A stretch of DNA of 64,000 nucleotides. Source: Styela clava. Its lineage: Eukaryota. Position numbers and translations under genes: made by a program. Numbering within the stretch: position 1 is the first letter of the stretch; each line of letters opens with the position of its first letter. The notes below the pieces were generated by a model that was given only the letters and a program-made list of their open reading frames with translations, was not told where the DNA came from and searched no databases. This document shows positions 1 through 52,589 of the stretch, one piece after another. The stretch lies in the NCBI RefSeq assembly GCF_964204865.1, contig NC_135259.1, positions 12,834,001 through 12,898,000 on the forward strand. Reading direction: 5' to 3'.

Positions 1-1533
1 CGCTGGTTTTTGGTGTGGTATATGGCACCCAAGATCCAGTGAATCTGATTTTATGGCTGCGGCTTAGCAATAACCTGTACCAATTGACAAAAAGAAATTT
101 ATTATAATAGGTGATATTAATATTAACTTGTTAAGCACCTCAATATTTACAAAAAACCCAAAGCATTCTTCAGTTTGAATGCTGATAATTCGAATTCATA
201 TTTTGACGATTTTATTTCTAAAGTCTTAATTGTGTGTGATAAGCATGCACCATTAAGAAAACTAACTAGAAAGGAACGTAGTCGAGAGAGAAAACCTTGG
301 ATAACAACTTGCATTTTGCGCTCGACTAAAGTTAGAGACAAATAGCATAATACTCATTTTATTAACGGATCCCCTGAACAAAAACAGCACTATAAGCAAC
401 AAATTCAAAATGAAAGCTAAGGAGATATATTTTGCCAAGCGCTTTAAAAATAATATAAATGATCCAAAAAAGACTTGTAGTACGATGAATTCTTTAATAA
501 ATTCGAAATCAAACATTAATGTTCCTCAAAAATTAATCGAACAGCATTCAATTAGTCGTTAATTACAGTGGACTAATATTAAGAATGTTCAATGGGTATT
601 TTTCACAGATTGGACAAACATTGTCTTAGGCATTTCACGATGTAAGCGATAATGAGCATCTGAAATTCATGACAAACAAGTCGTCCACGTTTATTGAAGA
701 TGCCTCGTTGAATGAGGTAGTATATATAATCAATTCTTTAAAAACTAACAAAGCAACTGGGTATGACCATATACCAGCTTATCTCCTGAATCTTCTCTGT
801 AGTACAATAAGTCCCATGCTCAGTAAACTCTCCAATTTCAATTATTTTATGGTTTATTTCCAGATTATCTTAAAGTTGCCAGGGTTGTTTCGTTTGTTCC
901 TGTATATAAATCTGGAAAAAAAATAATATATTCAATTATCGACTCATCTCTATACTTTCATGCTTTTCTATTGTTTTTAGAAAAGTTTATGCTTACTCGC
1001 CTCCAAAATTTTCTAAATAAACTTTCGTAATCATCATTCAACTACACAAGCAATTCTTCTAGATATTATTAGTAAATATTATGAAATCGTTGATAAGGGT
1101 TTGATTGGCTGTAGTATATTTTTGGATTTAAAAAAGAATTCGACACAGTTGTATACAAAATACTTTTAAGCGAATAGAAACTTTATGGGATTCGGCGCTC
1201 CCGTAGGATGTGCAACAAGATGGCAAACAACGGGACGTAGTATGTGTACCAGGTTGGAATTAGGCCATAATTTTATTCCAATTTTCCTTATTTTAGTTCT
1301 GTTACGAGTTTGTGGACTAGCCAAGTGACTCCCGTAGTATTTGTACCTGAAATTATGGCCTAACCCTAACCTGGTACACATACTACGTCCCGGGGTCCGC
1401 CATCTTGGTTCACATACTATTCTACATGAGTACCCTATTTTCTAGTTACCTGCACGGTCGAAATCAATTTGTCACTGTCTTTGCCAATGAATCACCTCAT
1501 CAACTTGTTTCTGTCGGCGTGCCCAAGGGCTCA
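1..1533 (+). mobile_element. Decayed non-LTR retrotransposon (CR1/L2-like LINE) ORF2, 5' part: endonuclease and RT remnants
   Basis: Broken-frame motifs: FIIIGDININLL (~97-135, APE endonuclease GDxN), KPWITT (~292), KATGYDHIP (ORF 669-926), NYRLISIL (~935), FLDLKK.FDTV (~1120) and GVPKGS (1516-1533). Many stops and frameshifts; interrupted by a MITE at 1194-1434. Confidence 0.85.
1194..1434. mobile_element. Palindromic MITE inserted in the LINE remnant
   Basis: Perfect 25-bp inverted repeat CGGGACGTAGTATGTGTACCAGGTT (1231-1255) / AACCTGGTACACATACTACGTCCCG (1368-1392), plus outer imperfect arms (CAAGATGGC / GCCATCTTG). Related sequence occurs at 32641-32830 and 60108-60292. Confidence 0.75.
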
Positions 1534-1629
1534 CCCAGATAGCACAACTACGTCGGAACAACCATGGCCGAACGTTGTTCGAACCACCGGCCCAATAATG
1601 GCGAACAACCATGTTCCAGCGAAGATTTG

Positions 1630-1850
1630 GCCGCTGGGCCAACGTCGGTCCTTTCGCTGTAATGCAACCGTGGCAAATGGTCGGGCCAACGTAGGCGATA
1701 CGTTGTATCACAATCGTGAAATATGGCCGGTCCAACGTTGGCGATACGTTGTAACACAATCGTGACATATGGCCGGGCCTACGTAGGTGACATGTTGTAA
1801 TACAATCGTGGCACATGGTCGGGCCAAGTTAGGCGATGTGTTGTACAGAC
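1630..1850. repeat. Subterminal tandem repeat, ~46-bp unit x ~5
   Basis: GGCCAACGTWGGCGA-like anchor recurs at 1639, 1686, 1732, 1778 and 1824 (spacing 46-47 bp) inside the left end of the CCCAG element. Confidence 0.85.
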
Positions 1851-3029
1851 AGTGTATGGATCTATACTACATAGAAATTTCCCACTAATCTAACATTATT
1901 TATATAATAAAAAACAAAAGATAACAAAATGTCTTTATTTTACAAATATGTATACATGTAATAAAATTAATCGGAGTTCGTTGCCAGATCATCCATAGCT
2001 GAAAAATATAAAAATTCTGTGTTAAATTGCAGTATTAGCAAATTACAGCACCAGAGTTCAAAGCCTAGTCTGAATAACTGCATCCCAACAAATTTTCAGA
2101 GTAGGAATCTTAAGCCAAGTTTCTGCAGTCGCAAATGTGTGAGTGAAGCTTACATTGACAAGACAATAATAATTGAGAAATACAGAAATTCTTGATTCCG
2201 CAAGGGGGGCGTAGACAATGTTTTGATGGGAATATTTGTTGGAGGGAATAATGATGATTTGAGATTTTATCTGACTAAAATGTCTTCAAATATTCCTTGT
2301 TGAAATTCATCTATATTATTAGAAACATCATGCACCATGATTAGTCTATTTGTTTAATAGATTTACAATAAATTTATTTGTAACTTCATCATTTGCTGTT
2401 GTGCTAGGGGGGGATGATAATGTAAAAAGTACTGTACGGGAGCGATGATACAAATAAGTTCGAAAACCACTGTTCGCCATTATGCACCAAACTCTGGCAA
2501 CATTGGATTGGCAATTTGGCACTTGACTCTAACCATAATCAGCTTGGCGATATTTCCTTAATAAATATTTTTCTATACTGTTCACTTTTGTATACAAAAT
2601 CTACATTCAATTTCTTTACTGTTCACAGTTGTTTACAAAATTATTACTCAATTTGACAATCATAATGATAAAAATGAATGGTGTGGCAACTGGCAAGTAC
2701 ATTTTGTTTACTACCAAACTTATCTAAATTTTCTCGCCTGTTTTTATTTTATTATATCTCTGTTGTTGTTGTGTGTGAGTAACTTAATTTAATTCATGAA
2801 CACGATAGGCATCTTTTTGGCAAAACCTTATATTCTTTACGCTTCAATCTTAATTAAGGTTTTGTTTTCACTCCAGATTGTCAGATTCTATTTAATCAAT
2901 TTTTGTTCATTTCCCGTATGAATTATCTTAAGCTGATTTGGAGTCAAAATAATCTTATACTTATAAAATAGAAGAGGGTAGAGCAGAGAAAGATGGTGGT
3001 ACAATATGATAAACATATTACATACGTAC

Positions 3030-3185
3030 CTTTAATAGCAGAAACTAAGGGCGTCCCACTCACTCCTTATCCACCGCGTCCTGCACAGTTGAAAGAGCGG
3101 GAGAGTAAATTTGTTATAACTGAGCTCATGATTCTCCAATCCAGTCTTTCTCGGAGCAACCTCCAAGACTTGACAAATATCTTAT
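3030..3185 (-). pseudogene. Decayed exon of a DUF4806 (BEN-like) accessory gene carried by the CCCAG element
   Basis: Bounded by ttccag| and |gtacgt on the minus strand. Translates IRYLSSLGGCSEKD../WRIMSSVITNLLSRSFNCAGRGG*GVSGTPLVSAIK, matching the LxxxGG..RIM..xTN....FNxxGR pattern of DUF4806 proteins. Contains one frameshift and one stop. A second decayed exon with splice sites lies at ~3962-4164. Confidence 0.6.
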
Positions 3186-4281
3186 CTGGAATGAGTAAAT
3201 AAGCCCAATTATAAGAATACATCTAATGAAAAGGTTTCCATCCGTTGCAAAAGCTCTATGTTAAATTATCGCGAGTATCTACTCTAAAATATACACATAT
3301 GTGTTTTGTCCACATCCCATTCGTATAAAAGTGAACAATTTTAATATTGCAATCAGATCGTATTTAGACATTTAAATAACCTTCCTTGAACACGAAGCGA
3401 AAATATTGGGCATATTGTATTTCATACATAAATTCGAAGCGCTTCATGCAGTCAAAAACAAAACGACAAAAAATAAAAGGCACTCAATAAGATGAGACCC
3501 AGCAAGGGTATTTTCACCTATTTTACTTTCATGTTCTGTTTAGCTTTCCAATTAATTATGGAGTAATCTGCAATATTTTAACATTGTACTAAAACTAAAC
3601 AAATATTCTGAATCTCAGAGATTTTTACATCGTGGTCTTCATACGATGGCATGTGTTACCGGTCAGCGAACTCTTAAATTAATTTTGCTTGCCCACTGGC
3701 CGCTGGGGTAAAAAGGTTGGGAACCACTGAACTAAACAGTTAAGTACAAGTACAACCACGTTGCACTAATGCCCCGCAAACTTACAGTCGATTTTCATCA
3801 GAAAGATTGAATAGAATAAATTGATTTTTACTGTTTTCTCGTTGTGGGGTCACAAGTATCTGTAGTCTGTGATTTTACAAAAATTGGGGTCGCGGAAAAA
3901 AAAGTTTGGGAACCACTGCCGTAAAGTGTATGTAATCAGCCTGTAAAAGTATTCAACTCACGAGCGATTTTTTCATCCTTGAATGTTTTCTGGATCAAAA
4001 TGTAATCAGACAATGAATTGACAATGAATTTCATCAATTCCTTTATGTCCGAGTCCACACTATAATCAGTGGAAAGTTGCAGATGCCGTAGCTTGTAGCA
4101 TAAGAGTTTCTACCGCCTGTCCCAACAATTTTTCCATGGACTGGATTGGAGCATGGCTTGATCTCTGAAAATCAAGTTAGTGTTACACAATATATAGTAC
4201 ATGATTGTCTTTCAGATGATAAACGTGAACGAATGGCCTATACTAATTACCAGAATATAAATTTTTCATTAATATTAGTTA

Positions 4282-43600: not shown

Positions 43601-44340
43601 CTATTGAGTCAAAGCGAAGGGAACATGCGAAAGATCGATAAGTCGGCGGTCTCCGATTACTATATAGTATTAGAGAGCGAGTTTTATATAGTCACCTAAA
43701 TTACATTACAGAATGAGAAATACGAATAGGAATAAAAAAAAAAAATTTGAGCCTCATGCATTAAAATTGAAATATATATTTGGATAAACTAGGATTTAAA
43801 TTTGGCAAAAAAAAATTAATAATTTTTGCACTTTGTTTTATGCTCAGATGACATTAGCGAAGTGCATCACAAATTATTTCAAATGAAAAAGGCGATATTA
43901 TCCGGGTATCTTATTGGGTTATTTGACTCTGTTTCGAATAATCAGTCCAGAAAATTTTTTGCAGGGTGTTGCCTGATACAGTACAGGCCCAACTACAGAA
44001 CTACAGATCCAACGTACGATGATTGATAAATAAACGGAGCACTTAATAATAGGCCTACTTCATAAGTGTTACCGTATAATTTGAAATGAAAACGGTAAAC
44101 AGGATGTCGGGGAAGTAAATAGGGCTATAGTAACATTTTCTCTGTCACTACGGTTTTAAACGATTGAAATTAAGAAGTTATTGAAAGTCGTGGAGGAATC
44201 GTACCGGTATAGCATAGGCCTATCATAGCTGCATAATGGAAAATCGGGCAGGTTTCAGACTTATACCTGTACCTGCATTAAAAATAAATTATTTCATCAA
44301 TTGCTCTATTTGACTGTTTGGTGTAATAGGTACCTAAGTT

Positions 44341-46086
44341 GGGTAGTTATAAAATGGCTATGTCCCATATGTCCGCTATGTCCCTACTAAAATGGCTATG
44401 TCCGCTATGTCCCTACTAAAATGGCTATGTCCCATCTAAAATTGCGACTCCGATATTTTCCTACTACAATGACTATGTCCGCTATGTCCCTACTAAAATG
44501 GCTATGTCCGCTATGTCCCTACTAAAATGGCTATGTCCCATCTAAAATTGCGACTCCTATATTTTCCTACTAAAATGACTATGTCCGCTATGTCCCTACT
44601 AAAATGACTATGTCCGCTATGTCCCTACTAAAATGGCTATGTCCGCTATATCCCTACTAAAATGGCTATGTCCCATCTAAAATTGCGACTTCGATATTTT
44701 CCTACTAAAATGACTATGTCCGCTATGTTCCTACTAAAACGGCTATGTCCCTACTAAAATGGCTAAGTCCCATTTAAAATTGCGACTCCGATATTTTCCT
44801 ACTAAAACGGCTATGTCCCTACTAAAATGGCTATGTCCCATCTAAAATTGCGACTCCGATATTTTCCTACTAAAATGACTATGTCCGCTATGTCCTTACT
44901 AAAATGGCTATGTCCGCTATATCCCTACTAAAATGGCTATGTCCCATCAAAAATTGCGACTCCGATATTTTCCTACTAAAATGACTATGTCCGCTATGTC
45001 CCTACTAAAATGACTATGTCCGCTATGTCCCTACTAAAATGGCTATGTCCGCTATATCCCTACTAAAATGGCTATGTCCCATCTAAAATTGCGACTCCGA
45101 TATTTTCCCACTAAAATGACTATGTCCGCTATGTCCTACTAAAATGACTATGTCCGCTATGTCCCTACTAAAATGGCTATGTCCCATCTAAAATTGCGAC
45201 TCCGATATTTTCCTACTAAAATGACTATGTCCGCTATGTCCCTACTAAAATGGCTATGTCCCATCTAAAATTGCGACTCCGATATTTTCCTACTAAAATG
45301 ACTATGTCCGCTATGTCCCTACTAAAATTGCTATGTCCCAACTAAAATGGCTATGTTTCATCTAAAATTGCGACTCCGATATTTTCCTACTAAAATGACT
45401 ATGTCCCTACTAAAATGACTATGTCCGCTATGTCCCTACTAAAATGGCTATGTCCGCTATATCCCTACTAAAATGGCTATGTCCCATCTAAAATTGCGAC
45501 TCCGATATTTTCCTACTAAAATGGCTATGTCCCTACTAAAATGGCTATGTCCCATCTAAAATTGCGACTCCGATATTTTTCTATTAAAATGACTATGTCC
45601 CTACTAAAATGGCTATGTCTCTACTAAAATGGCTATGTCCGCTATATCCCTACTAAAATGGCTATGTCCCTACTAAAATGGCTATGTCCCATCTGAAATT
45701 GCGACTCCGATATTTTCCTACTAAAATGACTATGTCCCTACTAAAATGGCTATGTCCGCTATATCCCTACTAAAATGGCTATGTCCCATCTAAAATTGCG
45801 ACTCCGATATTTTCTGACTATGTCCGCTATGTTCCTACTAAAATGACTATGTCCGCTATGTGCCTACTAAAACGGCTATGTCCCACTAAAATGGCTATGT
45901 CCCATCTAAAATTGCGACTCCGATATTTTCCTACTAAAATGACTATGTCCGTACTAAAATGGCTATTTCTCTACTAAAATGGCTATGTCCCATCTAAAAT
46001 TGCGACTCCGATATTTTCCTACTAAAATGGCTATGTCCCTACTAAAATGGCTATTTCCGCTATGTCCCTACTAAAATGGCTATGTC
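44341..46086 (+). repeat. Left foldback arm: modular tandem repeat
   Basis: Mix of CTACTAAAATGRCTATGTCC (20 bp), GCTATGTCC (9 bp) and CATCTAAAATTGCGACTCCGATATTTTC (28 bp). Confidence 0.95.
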
Positions 46087-46243
46087 ATCTACTACATTTT
46101 TAATATAGCCATGCATATCTGAGAAAAAAGCTAGTATATGTCTTGATGCAATTAAAATAAGTTTATTGCTTAGGCATATTAACGAATTGTGTCAAGGGCC
46201 GACTCTATCAAGGTCTACATATTTAATAGTCATTAATGAAAAA

Positions 46244-49082
46244 TTATATTTTTCGAGTCTTTCTCTTCCTTTTTTCTCCCTTTTTCAATCCAGCTGTTTG
46301 TGATGGAGTTATTGTTTGCAATTTACCATCAGTTGATGAACAAAGACGAGGAGGACATTTATCAGGGGAAGACAACTGAACACGTTGTAAAAAATCTTTA
46401 AAATATTTATTTCGTTCGACTTCCGTCATCAGCATCCAAGTGTATACGGACAACGAAAATTGGGCATATGGTCCGTACAACGTGTATGGCCCTTGCTTCA
46501 ACAGTGCCTTTCTCACATCGGTATACGACGACTTGATTATATCACCAAGCATGTGAATTAAATCAGGAAGTTTATGTTGTCTCCAATTGGCAACGCATTT
46601 CAATACATGGTTTAAGGACTCGTTGTTGTTATTTGTCCACAGGTATCCATTTGTATGTGACTTTTTTTGCCAAATATTATTTTTAAATAACGGAAGAAAT
46701 CTTGTTTTGAGGTATCCAACAACCTTTGCACCTGGTTTTACAGTACGATACGACTTCTTCAGTCTTTGAATCAAACTCTTTTTCATTTTGGCAATGAAAC
46801 AAACCGAAAACTTCACTAACAATTGATCTCCGGAGGTTTTCACTGGTACCGACCTTATCCTTAAGATAATTTATTAAATTTTCCCTCATGTGTCTGCTGC
46901 AAAGGACATGAGTTGAATCCGGGAAAGAAGATGTGAAAGCACCGTGTAGGGCCGATTCGTCATCAGTACCAACGGTCAAGTTATCCAACTTTCTACCAAG
47001 TTTGGATTTTATGTTGGTAAAAAATTCTGTAAATGTGGATTTGTCAGATTTGTGGTGTAAAAATATAGGACCGAAAAACAATGGGTGTTCACCGGATTTA
47101 CATGACAGCAAGGAAAGATTTTTGAAAACTGTAACTGTGACGTAGACTCGTCCTAAATTGAAGGTTTTATCAATCCTAAGAATAGTTTTACCTGAGCAAC
47201 AAAACCGCTTCAGATCCAAGCATTGCTCTTCAAAGAATAAAGTTACATTAACAGATTCCATTTTACTGTGGGTTACTTTTTGTACAAATTCGTTTGTTTG
47301 CGCCATGTTAATGACCTCTAATATCTCGTCAGCGTAATTTTTATGATATATTTTTATTCCTGCTCCCTGCTTTTTCTTTTTTTGATTGAACCTCGCATTT
47401 TCGATTTGTCTTAGATTTCTGGGGTTTTCCTCCGCATGTTGTTGAAGATTAACATAAAGTTTTTTTGCAGTAACGCCTTCACATTTAGATATAATATTTT
47501 CCATAACGTCTGCTGATGTTCTTATGTACGCCTGTTGGTTTATCTTTGCATTTTCATGGGGTGTATGACCAGGAAATATGCCCTTGTATTCCACTACTGC
47601 CACATTCATACCAATGTGGCCATCGATCCAAGTGATTCGTCGTTCATAGCCAGTCGGTTGCCGAGCATAATAATGTCCAATTCTCCATATTGCACTCGTT
47701 TTGGGTTGTGGCTCAATAACTGGATATGACAGTTTTTTTCCGTGGCGCGATCTTATGCAAAATCTCCCCCCTTTCTCATAAATATATTTAACCTCGTCAT
47801 TTTGAAGTAAATACAGAGCGGAGGTATAATTGGTTTGTTTCCAGCTTCCGCAATCGTCTTCGAAAATTTGCTTCACTTTTTTCTCTTTTCTGCGTATGTT
47901 TTCGTTGTGATCAACTATGAAATAACAGTTGTTTTTCTCCCCCGTTGGTATTCTAGGACTAACTTTCACGGTTTTGTTTTTGAATATTTTCAACAATTCT
48001 GAAATACCCAAGAAAATACCAAACGGAAGCTCATGCCAGCCCTCGTCTACAGTGTTTTGGTCAGTCTGCGCATAAATCATACTGGATATCATATTTTCAG
48101 ATTCTTCAGTGTGGCAATTTGAAATCTCCAGACCTGGTCTCTCCAGATCAATGCAAGTATTCAAGGACAATTTTTGACTTTGTCGAAGGTGTCTCTTTAA
48201 TAAAGGAACAAAGTGATTGGGTACGAAATCAATAAAATTTGCAGGAACATTTGTTGTAGTCCACATTATGTGAAAATATGGACCCCGTCTCGAAGAAACC
48301 TCCCTACCCTGGATACTTATTGAATAAGCGGAAGATCGCATGTCTGTTGGGCCGGTAGAAGGCTGAAAGGAGTTGTATGAAACTTTCAATGCGGCGCTAA
48401 GAGCCAATAAGCAATCCATCCCACAATGGCTGCCAATTGTCGCTGCACAGTGTAGTACGTTTTTCAGATCCAGAGTAACGATCCTAAAGTCTTTAAGGAC
48501 TGGATGTAAATTTGTACTCTCGATGTCGTAACACTGGGGATAAGACAGAATTTCAATAATAGTTAAGAAGCTAAGATGAAGGAAATGATCCTGTGTACCA
48601 AACAAAGCAAAAGAAACTGCCCGATACAGGCAATTTCCATCACCTATCGTATATATCGGTTCATATTCATCTAAAACCGATGGCGACAATTGTTGTAACA
48701 GATTATTGGACGGTTCATCTAATTCACCCTGAAAATTCCTCGATTCTGGAAACTCAGGAAGCTTTACTTTATGTGCGTCCATCAGCATTTGCTCCTGCTC
48801 AGCTATTTCTTTCAGGCATTTATATACATTTTTGGTATCAAAACTCACACGATCAATTTTGTTCATAACTCTTCTCATCGACACCTCGAAATCATAGCCA
48901 TGGTCAAGAAAAACACAAGATTTACAATAGTAAGATAGATGTTTTTCTCCCCATTGTTGCCGTAATTCGGTTTCTATCCGGGCACAATCGAAATGGCACC
49001 AGCGTTCACAACCAGAACATTCAATGCAACCAGTTGAACAATCCAAACCGCAAAACAAGCATTTGTATGATGACTGATACAT
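46244..49082 (-). pseudogene. PHD finger - OTU-like cysteine protease - MULE DDE transposase fusion, one frameshift
   Basis: ORF 49154-46683 (likely Met at 49082): C4HC3 PHD (CLFC..CIECSGCERWCHFDC..YYCKSC), OTU-like GDGNCLYRAVS...PNHFVPL, MULE core IDKTFNL (D at 47169-47171), GTDDESAL (D at 46962-46964) and CSRH. The catalytic E motif WTNNNNESLNHVLK (E at 46619-46621) is in the overlapping ORF 46843-46244, so the frame shifts at ~46720-46740. Confidence 0.9.
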
Positions 49083-49383
49083 ACCTCGATCCGGCAGAAA
49101 TGAAAAAAATCGTTGTGCCAGCGTCGACAAATACAACATGGTGCCAACTCGCAATAAAAAGATACCACACTCATGAATTTTCCCAGCATAAACAATAAAT
49201 GTGTTTTGCTAAATAAATTCTAAATTATACGCAGTCCAACAAGCACTTTAAAAATGCTATCTTAATTTTTGATAATTTCCTTGTCTCTTTCTTCTTTACG
49301 GTATAGTCATACTATGTGGCAACGTTGGGAAAACTAGCTTGGAAATGTCCTTTGTGACGTCACTAATACGGAATATATATTTA

Positions 49384-50036
49384 CAGGGTGGTCCAAGCAT
49401 TGATACCTTATGTAGTCATCAATGGTCCAAGGTTGTCGCCTCGCGGGCCACAAAATTACTTTTGCATTGTTCGCGGGCCACAATAGTGCCAAGAATAGGT
49501 AAACAGTGCAATACAAAACAAACACTTTTATTGTGCAAATACATAGTTATCACTCAGACATAGCCATTACAGGCTAATAGAATCCGCATTCGATTTTTAG
49601 TTTTCTATGATGCCTACCGTGTTTCCGCGAAAATAAGACAGTGTCTTATTTCAATTTTCTTTCGAAAAATATCACTAGAGCTTATTTTCGGGGAATGTCT
49701 TATAATTTTATTTATCAAAAACAAAATTAGAAAGTACAGAAGCGAAACACGGTATATTGTTAGCATATATTCCCGAACAAAAAGATAGAAAGCCAGATAA
49801 CGATTTAGACTGCCAAGCACATCATTCAACTTCGCTAGTTGCCTCAGCTAGCCATAACACTAGTCAATTCAGTGACATTATTGATGTAACAAAATGTCAA
49901 AAGTTTTTTCTATTTAATTTTATTACGAAACAACACGAAATGCGATTTTTTGATTACTCTCCGAATGTGACGCGGGCCACAGATAATAAAGCGGCGGGCC
50001 ACATGTGGCTTGCGTGCCTGGGTTTGGATCACCTTG
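49384..50036. mobile_element. hAT MITE (same family as 27678-28156) inside the Mutator element
   Basis: Ends CAGGGTGGTCCAA / TTGGATCACCTTG. The body aligns with 27678-28156; TSD-like ATATTTAC / ATATCTAC. Confidence 0.8.
49617..49752. mobile_element. 136-bp Tc1/mariner-type MITE nested in the hAT MITE
   Basis: TA|CCGTGTTTC...GAAACACGG|TA. The paralogous hAT copy has the empty site GATGCCTATATT at ~27866-27877. Confidence 0.85.
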
Positions 50037-50306
50037 ATATCTACCTTATAGGTAAGTTTTAAACAAAATATTAACTACTACCATTCAATTTATTTTGACA
50101 TTCTAGAATAGTTGATTTTAAAAATGTGCAAATTTTAAATCAAAATTAGAACTTGAAAAATTGCATATATAGTCTAGAATCTAGATACAAAGTAACAGTT
50201 GATTTGATGTTAATTTCAAAGTCTCTTTTCTTAACCCTACGTCACAATTGATTTTGTGGTGATGATCATGTTCGATATAAATCTATCAATTTTGATCCGA
50301 TATTCC

Positions 50307-52495
50307 AGACATAGCTATTTTAGTTGAAACTAATCGGAATCGCAATTTTAGAACATAGCCATTTAGGACTTTGCCATTTAAGTAGGGACATAGCCATTTT
50401 AGTAGAGATATAGACATTTTAGTAGGAATATAGCGGACATAGCCATTTTAGTAGGGACATAGCGGACATAGTCATTTTAGTAGGAAAATATCGGAGTCGT
50501 AATTTTAGATGGGACATAGCCATTTTAGTAGGGACATAGCCATTTTAGTAGGAAAATAGCGGACATAGCCATTTTAGTAGGGACATAGCGGACATAGTCA
50601 TTTTAGTAGGGACATAGCGGACATAGTCATTTCAGTAGGAAAATATCGGAGTCGCAATTTTAGATGGGACATAGCCATTTTAGTAGGGACATAGCGGACA
50701 TAGTCATTTTAGTAGGGACATAGCGGACATAGTCATTTTAGTAGGAAAATATCGGAGTCGCAATTTTAGATGGGACATAGCCATTTTAGTAGGGACATAG
50801 CGGACATAGTCGTTTTAGTAGGGACATAGCGGACATAGTCATTTTAGTAGGAAAATATCGGAGTCGCAATTTTAGATTGGACATAGCCATTTTAGTAGGG
50901 ACATAGCGGACATAGCCATTTTAGTAGGGACATAGCCATTTTAGTAGGGACATAGCGGACATAGTCATTTCAGTAGGAAAATATCGAAGTAGCAATTTTA
51001 GATGGGACATAGCCATTTTAGTAGGGACATAGCGGACATAGTCATTTTAGTAGGGACATAGTCATTTTAGTAGGAAAATATCGGAGTCGCAATTTTAGAT
51101 GGGACATAGCCATTTTAGTAGGGACATTGCGGACATAGCCATTTTAGTAGGGACATAGCGGACATAGTCATTTTAGTAGGAAAATATCGGAGTCGCAATT
51201 TTAGATGGGACATAGCCATTTTAGTAGGGACATAGCGGACATAGTCGTTTTAGTAGGGACATAGCGGACATAGTCATTTTAGTAGGAAAATATCGGAGTC
51301 GCAATTTTAGATTGGACGTAGCCATTTTAGTAGGGACATAGCGGACATAGCCATTTTAGTAGGGACATAGCCATTTTAGTAGGGACATAGCGGACATAGT
51401 CATTTCAGTAGGAAAATATCGAAGTAGCAATTTTAGATGGGACATAGCCATTTTAGTAGGGACATAGTCATTTTAGTAGGAAAATATCGGAGTCGCAATT
51501 TTAGATGGGACATAGCCATTTTATAGGGACATAGCGGACATAGCCATTTTAGTAGGAAAATAGCCGACATAGCCATTTTAGTAGGGACATAGCGGACATA
51601 GTCATTTTAGTAGGAAAATATCGGAGTCGCAATTTTAGATGGGACATAGCCATTTTAGTAGGGACATAGCGGACATAGCCATTTTAGTAGGGACATAGCG
51701 GACATAGTCATTTTAGTAGGGAAATATCGGAGTCGCAATTTTAGATGGGACATAGCCATTTTAGTAGGGACATAGCGGACATAGCCATTTTAGTAGGGAC
51801 ATAGCGGACATAGTCATTTTAGTAGGGAAATATCGGAGTCGCAATTTTAGATGGGACATAGCCATTTTAGTAGGGACATAGCGGACATAGTCATTTTAGT
51901 AGGAAAATATCGGAATCGCAATTTTAGATGGGACATAGCCATTTTAGTAGGGACATAGCGGACATAGCCATTTTAGTAGGGATATAGCGGACATAGCCAT
52001 TTCAGTAGGGACATAGCGGACATAGTCATTTTAGTAGGGAAATATCGGAGTCGCAATTTTAGATGGGACATAGCCATTTTAGTAGGGACATAGCGGACAT
52101 AGCCATTTTAGTAGGGACATAGCGGACATAGTCATTTTAGTAGGGAAATATCGGAGTCGCAATTTTAGATGGGACATAGCCATTTTAGTAGGGACATAGC
52201 GGACATAGTCATTTTAGTAGGAAAATATCGGAATCGCAATTTTAGATGGGACATAGCCATTTTAGTAGGGACATAGCGGACATAGCCATTTTAGTAGGGA
52301 TATAGCGGACATAGCCATTTCAGTAGGGACATAGCGGACATAGTCATTTTAGTAGGGACATAGCGGACATAGTCATTTTAGTAGGAAAATATCGGAGACG
52401 CAATTTTAGATGGGACATAGCCATTTTAGTAGGGACATAGCGGACATAGCCATTTTAGTAGGGACATATGGGACATAGCCATTTTATAACTACCC
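50307..52495 (-). repeat. Right foldback arm: modular tandem repeat, inverted relative to the left arm
   Basis: Reverse complements of the same 20-, 9- and 28-bp modules, with internal higher-order duplications of 435 bp and 318 bp. Confidence 0.95.
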
Positions 52496-52589
52496 CCTAA
52501 GTTAAGTTACTGTTTGCTGGTTTGCAATTCAGTGCTTTGATAGCACAGTAGCAACAAGCCCATCTTGTTGACTTGAGTTAACTTAGGCT

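What the first reader, a model, noticed from the sequence alone, without database searches (positions are those of the whole stretch)
46244..49082. Transposase fused to a chromatin reader and a deubiquitinase-like domain (PHD + OTU + MULE DDE)
Seen: one reading frame joins a complete C4HC3 PHD finger (~49060-48915), an OTU-like domain with intact Cys (GDGNC, 48630-48632) and His (PNHFVPL, 48213-48215), an uncharacterised middle region (IPTGEKNNCYF..DDCGSW..PHENAK..YIRT) and a Mutator DDE core. Established: PHD fingers often read histone H3 tails; OTU domains cleave ubiquitin or ubiquitin-like modifiers; some MULEs carry Ulp1-type proteases; the vertebrate gene vertnin has an OTU-like domain and is thought to be transposon-derived. 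Inference: this element may encode its own targeting/anti-silencing kit, reading histone marks to choose insertion sites and stripping ubiquitin/SUMO marks from chromatin or from itself. The residue two after the His is Val rather than the usual Asp/Asn, so protease activity is not guaranteed.
Basis: partly seen in the sequence, partly recalled or inferred. Interest (0 to 1): 0.8.

Follow-up and report, generated by a model that had tools for sequence, protein, structure and literature searches.

The report
Sea-squirt Mutator transposon carrying PHD and OTU
This is a young but frameshift-broken copy of a jumping gene of the sea squirt Styela clava whose single protein joins a PHD zinc finger and an OTU-type ubiquitin protease to a DNA-binding block and a Mutator-type cutting enzyme, a combination that is widespread in marine invertebrates but that I found in no paper.

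Summary
Window 44341-52495 is an 8,155-bp Foldback-type Mutator (MULE) transposon with an 8-bp target duplication. Its arms carry 103 oriented copies of one 14-mer.

Its one intronless gene (49082-46244, minus strand) encodes four parts:
- a PHD finger;
- an OTU domain (OTUD3 Z 15.4, rmsd 2.0 Å);
- a confidently folded, unannotated β-sheet + HTH block, probably the DNA-binding domain;
- an IS256/MULE-type DDE core (ISCth4 Z 13.0).

This copy is dead: a 2-bp deletion near 46722 shifts the frame. A sister copy keeps a 957-aa frame.

The OTU Cys and His are conserved in about 46 relatives that are under 50% identical to each other. The usual Asp/Asn two residues after the His is always Val, Ala or Cys. 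The PHD-OTU module is spread across the whole clade (tunicates, amphioxus, brachiopod, bivalves).

OTU or Ulp1 proteases and PHD fingers on DNA transposases are known. This combination on a MULE I found in no paper; Repbase and Dfam could not be checked. The "targeting/anti-silencing kit" reading remains untested.

The scan had already met this family on other DNA of this genome (s1-825813, s1-809923). A structural lead links the OTU + middle block to vertebrate vertnin.

The parts
44333..44340 (.). Left copy of the 8-bp target-site duplication, CCTAAGTT
   Evidence: Identical octamer at 52496-52503. Ten elements of the family have perfect 8-bp duplications of different sequence.
44341..46086 (+). 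Left arm. The terminus is GGGTAGTTATAAAATGGCTATGTCC, followed by arrays of 20/29/106-nt tandem units holding 44 copies of TCCCTACTAAAATG, all on the + strand. These are candidate transposase-binding sites.
   Evidence: 103 matches in the window against 0.01 expected; none outside the arms
46244..46722 (-). 3' part of the transposase gene, read in the frame used after the 2-bp deletion. It holds the catalytic Glu (WTNNNNES, 46639-46616), a C-terminal helical region and the basic tail KKGEKRKRKTRKI.
   Evidence: The tail matches the conserved KPxQxxR/basic C-termini of relatives.
46721..46723 (-). Site of the 2-bp deletion (TA/AT) that breaks the reading frame in this copy
   Evidence: Pairwise alignment with sister copy L002. 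Contigs of runs X1 and X2 carry the two extra bases here.
46463..47342 (-). Mutator/IS256-type DDE catalytic core: D638 at 47171-47169, D707 at 46964-46962, the CxxH motif at 46901-46890 and the Glu at 46621-46619. It is interrupted by the frameshift.
   Evidence: Pfam MULE 26.3 bits here and above cutoff in relatives. ISCth4 transposase: Foldseek E 1.4e-6; Z 13.0 over 242 residues, model 581-874.
47340..47543 (-). Three-helix HTH-like bundle (about residues 514-581)
   Evidence: Model pLDDT 84-94. VIA matches to homeodomain-like DNA-binding domains, including SETMAR/Hsmar1 TIR-binding Z 4.9, Mos1 4.6 and Tc3 4.5. Modest scores.
47553..48017 (-). β-rich middle domain (about residues 356-510) with the motifs IPTGEKNN, DDCGSW, RRITW, VEYKG and PH(G/E)NAK. 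Probably the sequence-specific DNA-binding domain. No Pfam family covers it.
   Evidence: Model pLDDT 89.2, pTM 0.81. No Foldseek hit at E<=1e-3. VIA: SSR4 Z 7.6, WOPR-DNA 6.2, GCM-DNA 5.9, NAC 5.1, WRKY 5.1. No Pfam hit at E<=10.
48048..48185 (-). Disordered linker (residues 300-345) between the OTU and the DNA-binding block
   Evidence: pLDDT 32-57 in the full-length model. Its length and sequence vary widely among relatives.
48189..48713 (-). OTU-type papain-like cysteine protease domain (residues 124-298). Cys151 is at 48632-48630 and His290 at 48215-48213. The residue at His+2 is Val.
   Evidence: OTUD3 Z 15.4, rmsd 2.0 Å, 132 of 141 residues; OTUD1 13.9; DUBA 13.2; A20 12.9. All 19 PDB profile hits are OTU proteins.
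48915..49061 (-). PHD finger, C4HC3 (C8, C11, C22, C25, H30, C33, C53, C56), with an invariant Trp two residues before the His
   Evidence: Pfam PHD 14.5 bits here; above cutoff in relatives P0008 and P0013. Best PDB sequence hit is the CXXC1 PHD, E 0.0016. All ligands are conserved in 19 distinct relatives. pLDDT 92-95.
49412..50131 (.). Spacer upstream of the gene that holds a very high-copy repeat. The sub-part 49398-49741 differs between copies.
   Evidence: Contig depth is 100-300 times that of the gene. Collinearity breaks.
50373..52495 (-). Right arm: the inverted counterpart of the left arm, with 59 copies of the 14-mer, all on the - strand, ending in the inverted terminus
52496..52503 (.). 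Right copy of the 8-bp target-site duplication, CCTAAGTT

Best explanation
SHOWN. Window 44341-52495 is one copy of a low-copy, recently mobile Foldback-type Mutator (MULE) DNA transposon of Styela clava; about 57 termini in the genome imply about 25-30 elements. Its single intronless gene encodes, in order: a PHD finger; an OTU-fold cysteine protease with conserved Cys and His; a disordered linker; a β-sheet domain plus an HTH bundle; and an IS256/MULE-type DDE core with a basic tail. This particular copy is inactivated by a 2-bp deletion.

INFERRED. The β-sheet + HTH block binds the roughly 100 oriented 14-mer sites in the two arms. The DDE core then carries out cut-and-paste transposition, leaving 8-bp duplications at locally GC-rich targets. 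The PHD-OTU module is ancestral to the clade and kept under selection. It most likely acts as a chromatin-tethered deubiquitinase (or a protease for a ubiquitin-like modifier) working with a Cys-His dyad. Its role would be to protect the transposase or transpososome from ubiquitin-dependent removal, or to edit ubiquitin marks at the site of action.
For: Element boundaries and duplications: (10 pairs with perfect 8-bp duplications). Arm motif: 103 copies against 0.01 expected, strictly oriented. Copies are 97-99.3% identical, each with private lesions. OTU: Z 15.4 to OTUD3, Foldseek E 1.4e-4, PDB profile hits only to OTU proteins, and Pfam cutoff passed in L014 and six of nine relatives. Cys and His are conserved in about 46 representatives under 50% identical to each other. 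PHD: ligands conserved in 19 distinct sequences, Pfam cutoff passed in two relatives. DDE: ISCth4 E 1.4e-6, Z 13.0. Middle block: pLDDT 89, with best structural neighbours being DNA-binding β-sheet folds and transposase HTH domains. The module is scattered over the whole core tree. Target octamers average 0.495 GC against 0.345 in the background, p=3e-5. Transposon-borne deubiquitinases of another class are enzymatically active (PMC9741609).
Against: No enzymatic or binding data exist for this family. The canonical third catalytic residue (Asp/Asn at His+2) is Val, Ala or Cys in every member, so activity is not assured. Model coordinates could not be inspected to look for a substitute residue. 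The DNA-binding assignment of the middle block rests on Z values of 5-7.6, a range in which unrelated folds also fall. The window copy's own Pfam scores are all below the curated cutoffs. pN/pS among the young copies is about 1; that is expected after insertion but gives no support for selection. Expression is not shown, because the runs laid are only guessed to be RNA. A paralog with an intact frame but no OTU motifs (L022) shows the module is dispensable in at least one lineage.
Confidence: 0.65

Rival explanations
1. The OTU domain is a pseudo-enzyme. It keeps the fold and a Cys/His pair but serves as a ubiquitin- or ubiquitin-like-binding module, a reader and not an eraser. It would recruit the transposase to ubiquitinated chromatin or repair factors.
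For: The third triad residue is absent family-wide. Vertnin, the nearest named structural neighbour, is classed as an inactive OTU homolog (PMC10318531).
Against: The Cys in DG(N/S)C and the His in (N/D)HF are kept in about 46 lineages under 50% identical to each other. A binding-only module would not be expected to keep both. Cys-His dyads can suffice in papain-like enzymes (general knowledge).
Confidence: 0.2
2. The OTU domain is a self-processing protease. It cuts the polyprotein in the disordered linker and releases a PHD-OTU fragment from the DNA-binding + DDE transposase, as OTU-like proteases of some RNA viruses do.
For: A 46-residue disordered linker of very variable length follows the OTU directly. 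Babu et al. proposed polyprotein processing for protease-bearing MULE transposases (PMC1702500).
Against: No conserved cleavage motif, such as a Gly-Gly-like site, is visible in the linker across relatives. OTU enzymes are typically isopeptidases. Nothing here distinguishes action in cis from action in trans.
Confidence: 0.12
3. The fusion is an artefact of this copy or of gene prediction: a chance read-through of neighbouring genes or nested elements, not a real single protein.
For: Some database relatives are clearly chimeric or truncated models. P0001 is fused to PIN4, P0006 has a recombinase-like N-terminus, and P0114 and P0147 start inside the OTU His motif.
Against: Uninterrupted 957-, 971- and 908-aa frames occur in this genome with the same domain order. 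The same order is seen in Lingula, Branchiostoma, Pinctada and others. Contigs show no splice joints within the frame. pLDDT is high across all domains.
Confidence: 0.01

Closest known systems
Phantom / Foldback-type MULEs (Marquez & Pritham 2010, cited from PMC6446971 and PMC3169594; Tm1 of Meloidogyne, PMC3169594)
   Same: MULE DDE transposase inside long, internally repetitive Foldback-like inverted arms; 8-10 bp target duplications; animal hosts, tunicates included.
   Different: [quoted passage not shown] Here no FLYWCH or other zinc-finger family is detected in front of the DDE, the β-sheet domain lacks a conserved Cys/His ligand set, and a PHD-OTU module is added. Neither PMC6446971 nor PMC3169594 reports a protease for Phantom elements.
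Ulp1-protease MULEs (KI-MULEs of plants; hydra and lancelet MuDR) and the Medicago MULEs with a papain-like domain that PMC1702500 assigns to the OTU superfamily (PMC2836005, PMC1702500)
   Same: A Mutator transposase fused to a papain-like protease specific for ubiquitin-like modifiers.
   Different: Those carry Ulp1 (SUMO-protease clan) or, in Medicago, a C-terminal protease domain. Here the protease is a bona fide OTU fold, N-terminal, and preceded by a PHD finger.
Ginger1 and Helentron OTU domains (PMC2836005, PMC9741609, PMC6431247)
   Same: An OTU-like cysteine protease domain inside the main transposition protein of an animal DNA transposon. One Ginger1 family also has a PHD finger.
   Different: The transposition enzymes are different (a Gypsy-type integrase; a RepHel rolling-circle protein), and the OTU is C-terminal in Ginger1. 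Catalytic activity of transposon OTU domains had not been tested as of 2022 (PMC9741609).
Rehavkus elements (Repbase; summarised in PMC6446971)
   Same: MULE-related DDE transposase with a PHD finger and minisatellite-like repeats near a terminus; about 9-bp duplication.
   Different: No protease is reported; hosts are arthropods and annelids. No reference sequences were available to me, so the relationship is untested.
Vertnin (VRTN), a vertebrate DNA-binding developmental regulator
   Same: It has an inactive OTU-like domain (PMC10318531). The ESM Atlas cluster 'Vertnin' (PF28388, partly with the transposase-type HTH_Tnp_1 and HTH_23) is the nearest named structural neighbour of a homolog's OTU + middle block: 229 aligned residues spanning 100-556.
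   Different: TM is only 0.41/0.28. Vertnin lacks the catalytic residues and has no DDE core. No sequence-level link was found, and PF28388 is not in the local Pfam copy.

Membership tests
OTU cysteine protease (Pfam PF02338; MEROPS C85-like) | Papain-like OTU fold | tested here: met
   OTUD3 Z 15.4, rmsd 2.0 Å over 132 of 141 residues. OTUD1, VCPIP1, DUBA, A20, TRABID and the vOTUs give Z 11-14. Foldseek E 1.4e-4, target TM 0.76.
OTU cysteine protease (Pfam PF02338; MEROPS C85-like) | Catalytic Cys in the D-G-x-C motif at the start of a helix, and catalytic His in an (N/D)-H-aromatic motif | tested here: met
   GDGNC (Cys151) and PNHF (His290) in this copy. DG(N/S)C(L/F)(F/Y) and (N/D)HF in about 46 diverse relatives.
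OTU cysteine protease (Pfam PF02338; MEROPS C85-like) | Third catalytic residue, Asp/Asn two residues after the His | tested here: not met
   Val here; Val, Ala or Cys in all relatives, never Asp or Asn.
OTU cysteine protease (Pfam PF02338; MEROPS C85-like) | Score above Pfam's gathering cutoff | tested here: inconclusive
   Window copy 16.6 bits against a cutoff of 23.3. Relatives L014, P0008, P0010, P0012, P0030, P0034 and P0036 pass, with 25-35 bits. Family profile against PDB OTUD1: E 1.3e-7.
PHD finger (PF00628) | C4HC3 zinc-ligand pattern with canonical spacing and a Trp two residues before the His | tested here: met
   C8-x2-C11-x10-C22-x2-C25-x4-H30-x2-C33-x19-C53-x2-C56. All ligands and the Trp are conserved in 19 distinct relatives.
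PHD finger (PF00628) | Profile score above cutoff / PHD fold | tested here: inconclusive
   Window copy 14.5 bits against 24. P0008 (26.8) and P0013 (24.7) pass. PDB sequence hits are PHD fingers only (CXXC1 E 0.0016; DIDO1, MLL1, PHF13 are weaker). The small domain was not searched by structure on its own.
PHD finger as an H3K4me3 reader | Aromatic cage and measured peptide binding | not testable with these tools
   Two cage-type positions are conserved: the aromatic two residues before C1 in 15 of 19, and the Trp in 19 of 19. Loop-1 aromatics are absent. No binding data exist.
Mutator/MULE superfamily (PF10551; IS256-related) | DDE catalytic core of MULE/IS256 type with the CxxH motif | tested here: met
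   D638, D707 and the Glu in WTNNNNES, plus CSRH. Pfam MULE 26.3 against 27.6 here, passed by L014, P0010 and P0036. ISCth4 (IS256 family): E 1.4e-6, Z 13.0.
Mutator/MULE superfamily (PF10551; IS256-related) | Terminal inverted repeats and 8-11 bp target-site duplications | tested here: met
   Inverted termini and perfect 8-bp duplications at 10 independent insertions.
Phantom subclass of MULEs | FLYWCH (WRKY-GCM1-fold) zinc finger N-terminal to the MULE domain | tested here: inconclusive
   No FLYWCH, WRKY or FAR1 Pfam hit even at E<=10. The conserved Cys/His are too few for a zinc site. The fold resembles GCM, NAC and WRKY only at Z 5-6. No Phantom reference sequences were available for a tree.
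Foldback-type elements (a structural class) | Long inverted arms built of tandem subrepeats | tested here: met
   Arms of 1.75 and 2.1 kb made of 20/29/106-nt units.
Vertnin family (PF28388) | Match to the Vertnin_mid profile | not testable with these tools
   PF28388 is absent from the local library. There is only an Atlas structural neighbour, TM 0.41/0.28.

The most novel reading that the evidence does not exclude
The PHD-OTU module is a self-contained chromatin unit: the PHD docks the transposase on methylated histone H3 tails, and the OTU, working as a Cys-His dyad, removes ubiquitin or a ubiquitin-like mark there. In addition, vertebrate vertnin would be a domesticated, catalytically dead descendant of the OTU + β-sheet + HTH part of this same transposase clade. 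That would tie a vertebra-number gene to a Mutator transposon.
Probability: 0.2. Interest if true: 0.75.

Novelty: new variant of a known kind. Interest (0 to 1): 0.52.

Why it matters
Transposons that carry their own ubiquitin-system enzymes are a recurring but poorly understood theme. A 2022 study showed that Helitron-borne VTD deubiquitinases are active, and noted that transposon OTU domains have never been assayed (PMC9741609). This clade offers a compact and tractable case. The module is 300 residues long, confidently folded, and conserved from tunicates and amphioxus to brachiopods and bivalves, with natural intact paralogs in one genome. It also shows that MULEs are abundant in invertebrate chordates, contrary to the 'limited evidence' stated in the broadest survey (PMC6446971). 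It adds an unannotated domain, probably DNA-binding, found in thousands of proteins. And it gives a concrete, testable lead on the origin of vertnin.

Tried and rejected
1. Pfam on the window copy alone gave only sub-threshold hits, so I turned to relatives and structure.
2. Foldseek on the middle domain gave nothing at E<=1e-3; the top rows, CYTH/triphosphatase proteins at TM 0.22-0.33, I rejected as weak.
3. A word search with the OTU region alone returned only two hits and no named OTU subfamily or vertnin.
4. The six-frame search with PF28388 failed because the family is not in the library.
5. The first Atlas call on the L002 protein failed because the exact sequence is not held.
6. pN/pS among the young copies is about 1 and uninformative.
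7. The IQ-TREE mixture search did not finish in two 300-s runs. I used FastTree, so the tree supports only the coarse statement that the module is not clustered.
8. I first treated the 'short' 590-700-aa relatives as lacking OTU. I rejected that after two of them proved to start inside the OTU His motif.
9. Expression: the runs are only guessed to be RNA and are kept as contigs, so I make no claim.
All protein-level work used the natural sister copy L002 or natural paralogs.
11. The Phantom paper (PMC2927773) is not held.
Full report
WHAT IS THERE. The minus strand of 46244-49154 holds an 823-aa frame followed by an overlapping 199-aa frame. Alignment with a sister copy elsewhere in the genome (L002, 99.3% identical over 3.2 kb) shows that the window copy lacks two bases near 46722. 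Those two bases account for the frame change. L002 keeps a 957-aa frame but lacks 11 bp near the 3' end, and so loses the basic tail that the window copy still encodes. All protein work used natural sequences: L002, the paralogs L014, L021 and L022, and database proteins.

THE ELEMENT. The gene sits inside an 8,155-bp element (44341-52495). The termini are the inverted sequence GGGTAGTTATAAAATGGCTATGTCC, flanked by the direct repeat CCTAAGTT. The arms (about 1.75 and 2.1 kb) are arrays of 20/29/106-nt units. The 14-mer TCCCTACTAAAATG occurs 103 times in the window against 0.01 expected by chance. All 44 copies in the left arm are on the + strand, all 59 in the right arm are on the - strand, and there are none elsewhere. 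Genome-wide there are 57 termini, and the reversed-pattern control gives 0. Ten terminus pairs share perfect 8-bp duplications, each of a different sequence, with element lengths from 4.9 to 45 kb. Copies of the gene are 97-99.3% identical, and each carries its own stops or indels. This is therefore a young, low-copy Foldback-type element with a Mutator-type duplication. The copy in the window is dead.

THE PROTEIN, DOMAIN BY DOMAIN.
(i) PHD. The pattern is the canonical C4HC3 with standard spacing. The window copy scores below Pfam's cutoff (14.5 against 24), but relatives P0008 and P0013 pass. The best PDB sequence hit is the CXXC1 PHD finger. All eight ligands and the Trp two residues before the His are conserved in 19 distinct relatives, and an aromatic residue two positions before the first Cys is present in 15 of 19.
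(ii) OTU. The window copy matches Pfam only around the Cys motif. The paralog L014 and six of nine relatives pass the cutoff. A family profile hits only OTU proteins in the PDB: OTUD1 at 1.3e-7 and OTUD5 at 1.4e-6 over about 100 residues. The full-length AlphaFold model (pLDDT 88.9) superposes on OTUD3 at Z 15.4, rmsd 2.0 Å, over 132 of 141 residues. OTUD1, VCPIP1, DUBA, A20, TRABID, Cezanne, OTUB1/2 and many nairovirus vOTUs follow at Z 11-14. In about 46 representatives that are under 50% identical to each other, the motifs are DG(N/S)C(L/F)(F/Y) and (N/D)HF(V/A/C). The canonical Asp/Asn at His+2 is never present.
(iii) Linker. Residues 300-345 are disordered and hypervariable in length among relatives.
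(iv) Middle block. No Pfam family matches it, even at E<=10. Folded on its own it gives pLDDT 89.2 and pTM 0.81, with a β-rich core and a helical bundle. Foldseek finds nothing significant. The Foldseek-independent aligner finds, for the β core, SSR4 (Z 7.6), WOPR on DNA (6.2), GCM on DNA (5.9), NAC (5.1) and a WRKY DNA-binding domain (5.1). For the helices it finds homeodomain-like HTH domains, including the TIR-binding domains of SETMAR/Hsmar1, Mos1 and Tc3 (Z 4.5-4.9). These Z values lie in the range where unrelated folds also appear. However, WRKY-GCM1-type domains are what MULE transposases are known to carry in front of the catalytic core (PMC1702500). I therefore read this block as the DNA-binding domain, as an inference.
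(v) DDE. The triad is D638, D707 and the Glu of WTNNNNES, with a CxxH motif. Pfam MULE is 26.3 against 27.6 here and above cutoff in relatives. The model matches the IS256-family ISCth4 transposase at Foldseek E 1.4e-6 and Z 13.0 over 242 residues, ahead of Hermes and P-element transposases.

DISTRIBUTION. The word search found relatives in Branchiostoma, Ciona, Mytilus and unnamed eukaryote assemblies. An exhaustive profile search found 14,553 cluster representatives at E<=1e-3 and 1,844 at E<=1e-30. Named members are all 'uncharacterized protein', from Styela clava, Lingula anatina, Branchiostoma floridae and Pinctada imbricata; this also confirms the organism. Among proteins with a complete core and at least 250 residues in front of it, nearly all carry the OTU motifs, and at least 15 show the full PHD-OTU-middle-DDE order. 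On a FastTree of the shared core, rows with OTU and with PHD+OTU are scattered through all major clades and are not clustered. That fits an ancestral module with losses and many truncated gene models; two 'short' models begin inside the OTU His motif. One intact Styela paralog (L022, 928 aa) has no OTU motifs, so the module can be lost.

TARGETS. The 27 distinct target octamers average 0.495 GC against 0.345 in the background (p=3e-5). Flank positions 9-50 average 0.425 (p=1e-7), and the excess has almost gone by 300-500 nt. The background comes from this window only. The preference is local. It is compatible with a DNA-level or nucleosome-edge preference, and it neither supports nor excludes PHD-guided targeting.

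EXPRESSION. Contigs from four small runs cover the frame at low depth, without splice-like joints. The X1 and X2 contigs carry the two bases missing from the window copy. The runs are only guessed to be RNA, so I claim no more than 'intronless, and present in those libraries'.

COMPARISON WITH WHAT IS KNOWN. OTU domains are documented in Ginger1 and Helentron transposons, and Ulp1 proteases in MULEs of plants, hydra and lancelet (PMC2836005, PMC6431247). A papain-like protease assigned to the OTU superfamily on Medicago MULEs, and PHD fingers on Ciona and C. elegans MULE transposases, were noted in 2006 (PMC1702500). Rehavkus elements have a PHD finger (PMC6446971). Foldback-type MULEs (Phantom, Tm1) are known (PMC3169594). 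The broadest MULE survey mentions no OTU or protease and calls the evidence for chordate MULEs limited (PMC6446971). A 2026 arthropod survey likewise mentions neither (PMC13359780). Nine literature searches found no description of a PHD-OTU-MULE protein. Repbase and Dfam could not be queried. Transposon OTU domains had not been tested for activity as of 2022 (PMC9741609). I therefore rate this as a new variant of a known kind. The scan itself had already noted the same family on other DNA of this genome (s1-825813, with a concordant follow-up; s1-809923), and had noted this very element as a Foldback (s1-817651).

VERTNIN LEAD. Vertnin is classed as an inactive OTU homolog (PMC10318531). In the ESM Atlas, the nearest named structural neighbour of the OTU + middle block of the Lingula homolog is a chordate 'Vertnin' cluster. 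That cluster carries PF28388 in all members and the transposase-type HTH families in part of them; 229 residues align across query residues 100-556, at TM 0.41/0.28. No sequence-level test was possible. It is a lead and not a result.

VERDICT. The architecture is real, conserved and structurally well supported. The functional story is plausible but untested. The missing third catalytic residue is a family trait, not a lesion of this copy.

Noticed in passing
window 49412-50131 (variable part 49398-49741): The spacer between the gene's 5' end and the right arm holds a sequence whose contig depth is 100-300 times that of the gene. It looks like a very high-copy short repeat (MITE- or SINE-like). 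The adjacent roughly 340 nt differ in length and sequence between copies.
   Followed up: partly
G000:C6:1963064-2007918; C17:7671561-7696784; C2:26330734-26348069: Terminus pairs 45, 25 and 17 kb apart share identical 8-bp flanking octamers (CTTATGTC, ATTGTGGC, GGTACCGG). This suggests giant or composite elements, or elements swollen by nested insertions.
   Followed up: no
L021 (G000:C220) and near-identical copies on C5, C14 and C18 (two): A paralogous family, about 33% identical, has several intact 908-aa frames that start at the OTU domain. NCBI's model for the same family (XP_039247589.2, 987 aa) adds a PHD finger, so the PHD may sit on a separate upstream exon there.
   Followed up: partly
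L022 (G000:C10:23394500-23400500), ORF 1310-4009: An intact 928-aa paralog keeps the middle block and the DDE core but has no recognisable OTU Cys or His motifs. It is a natural 'OTU-less' comparator.
   Followed up: partly
window 47544-47561: The window copy reads PHENAK where the sister copy and nearly all relatives have H-G-N. This is a Gly-to-Glu change at a near-invariant position of the middle domain, and a second likely defect of this copy.
   Followed up: partly
P0001 (Branchiostoma lanceolatum 'PIN4') and P0006 (Mytilus coruscus): Public gene models fuse this transposase to unrelated parts: a parvulin/PIN4 C-terminus in P0001, and a segment in front of the OTU in P0006 that I read by eye as recombinase-like (not tested). 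These look like annotation chimeras or nested elements.
   Followed up: no
G000:C14:13979938-13981457; C6:12563983-12564995; C4:8834355-8835357: Termini only 1-1.5 kb apart suggest short non-autonomous, arms-only derivatives of the family.
   Followed up: no
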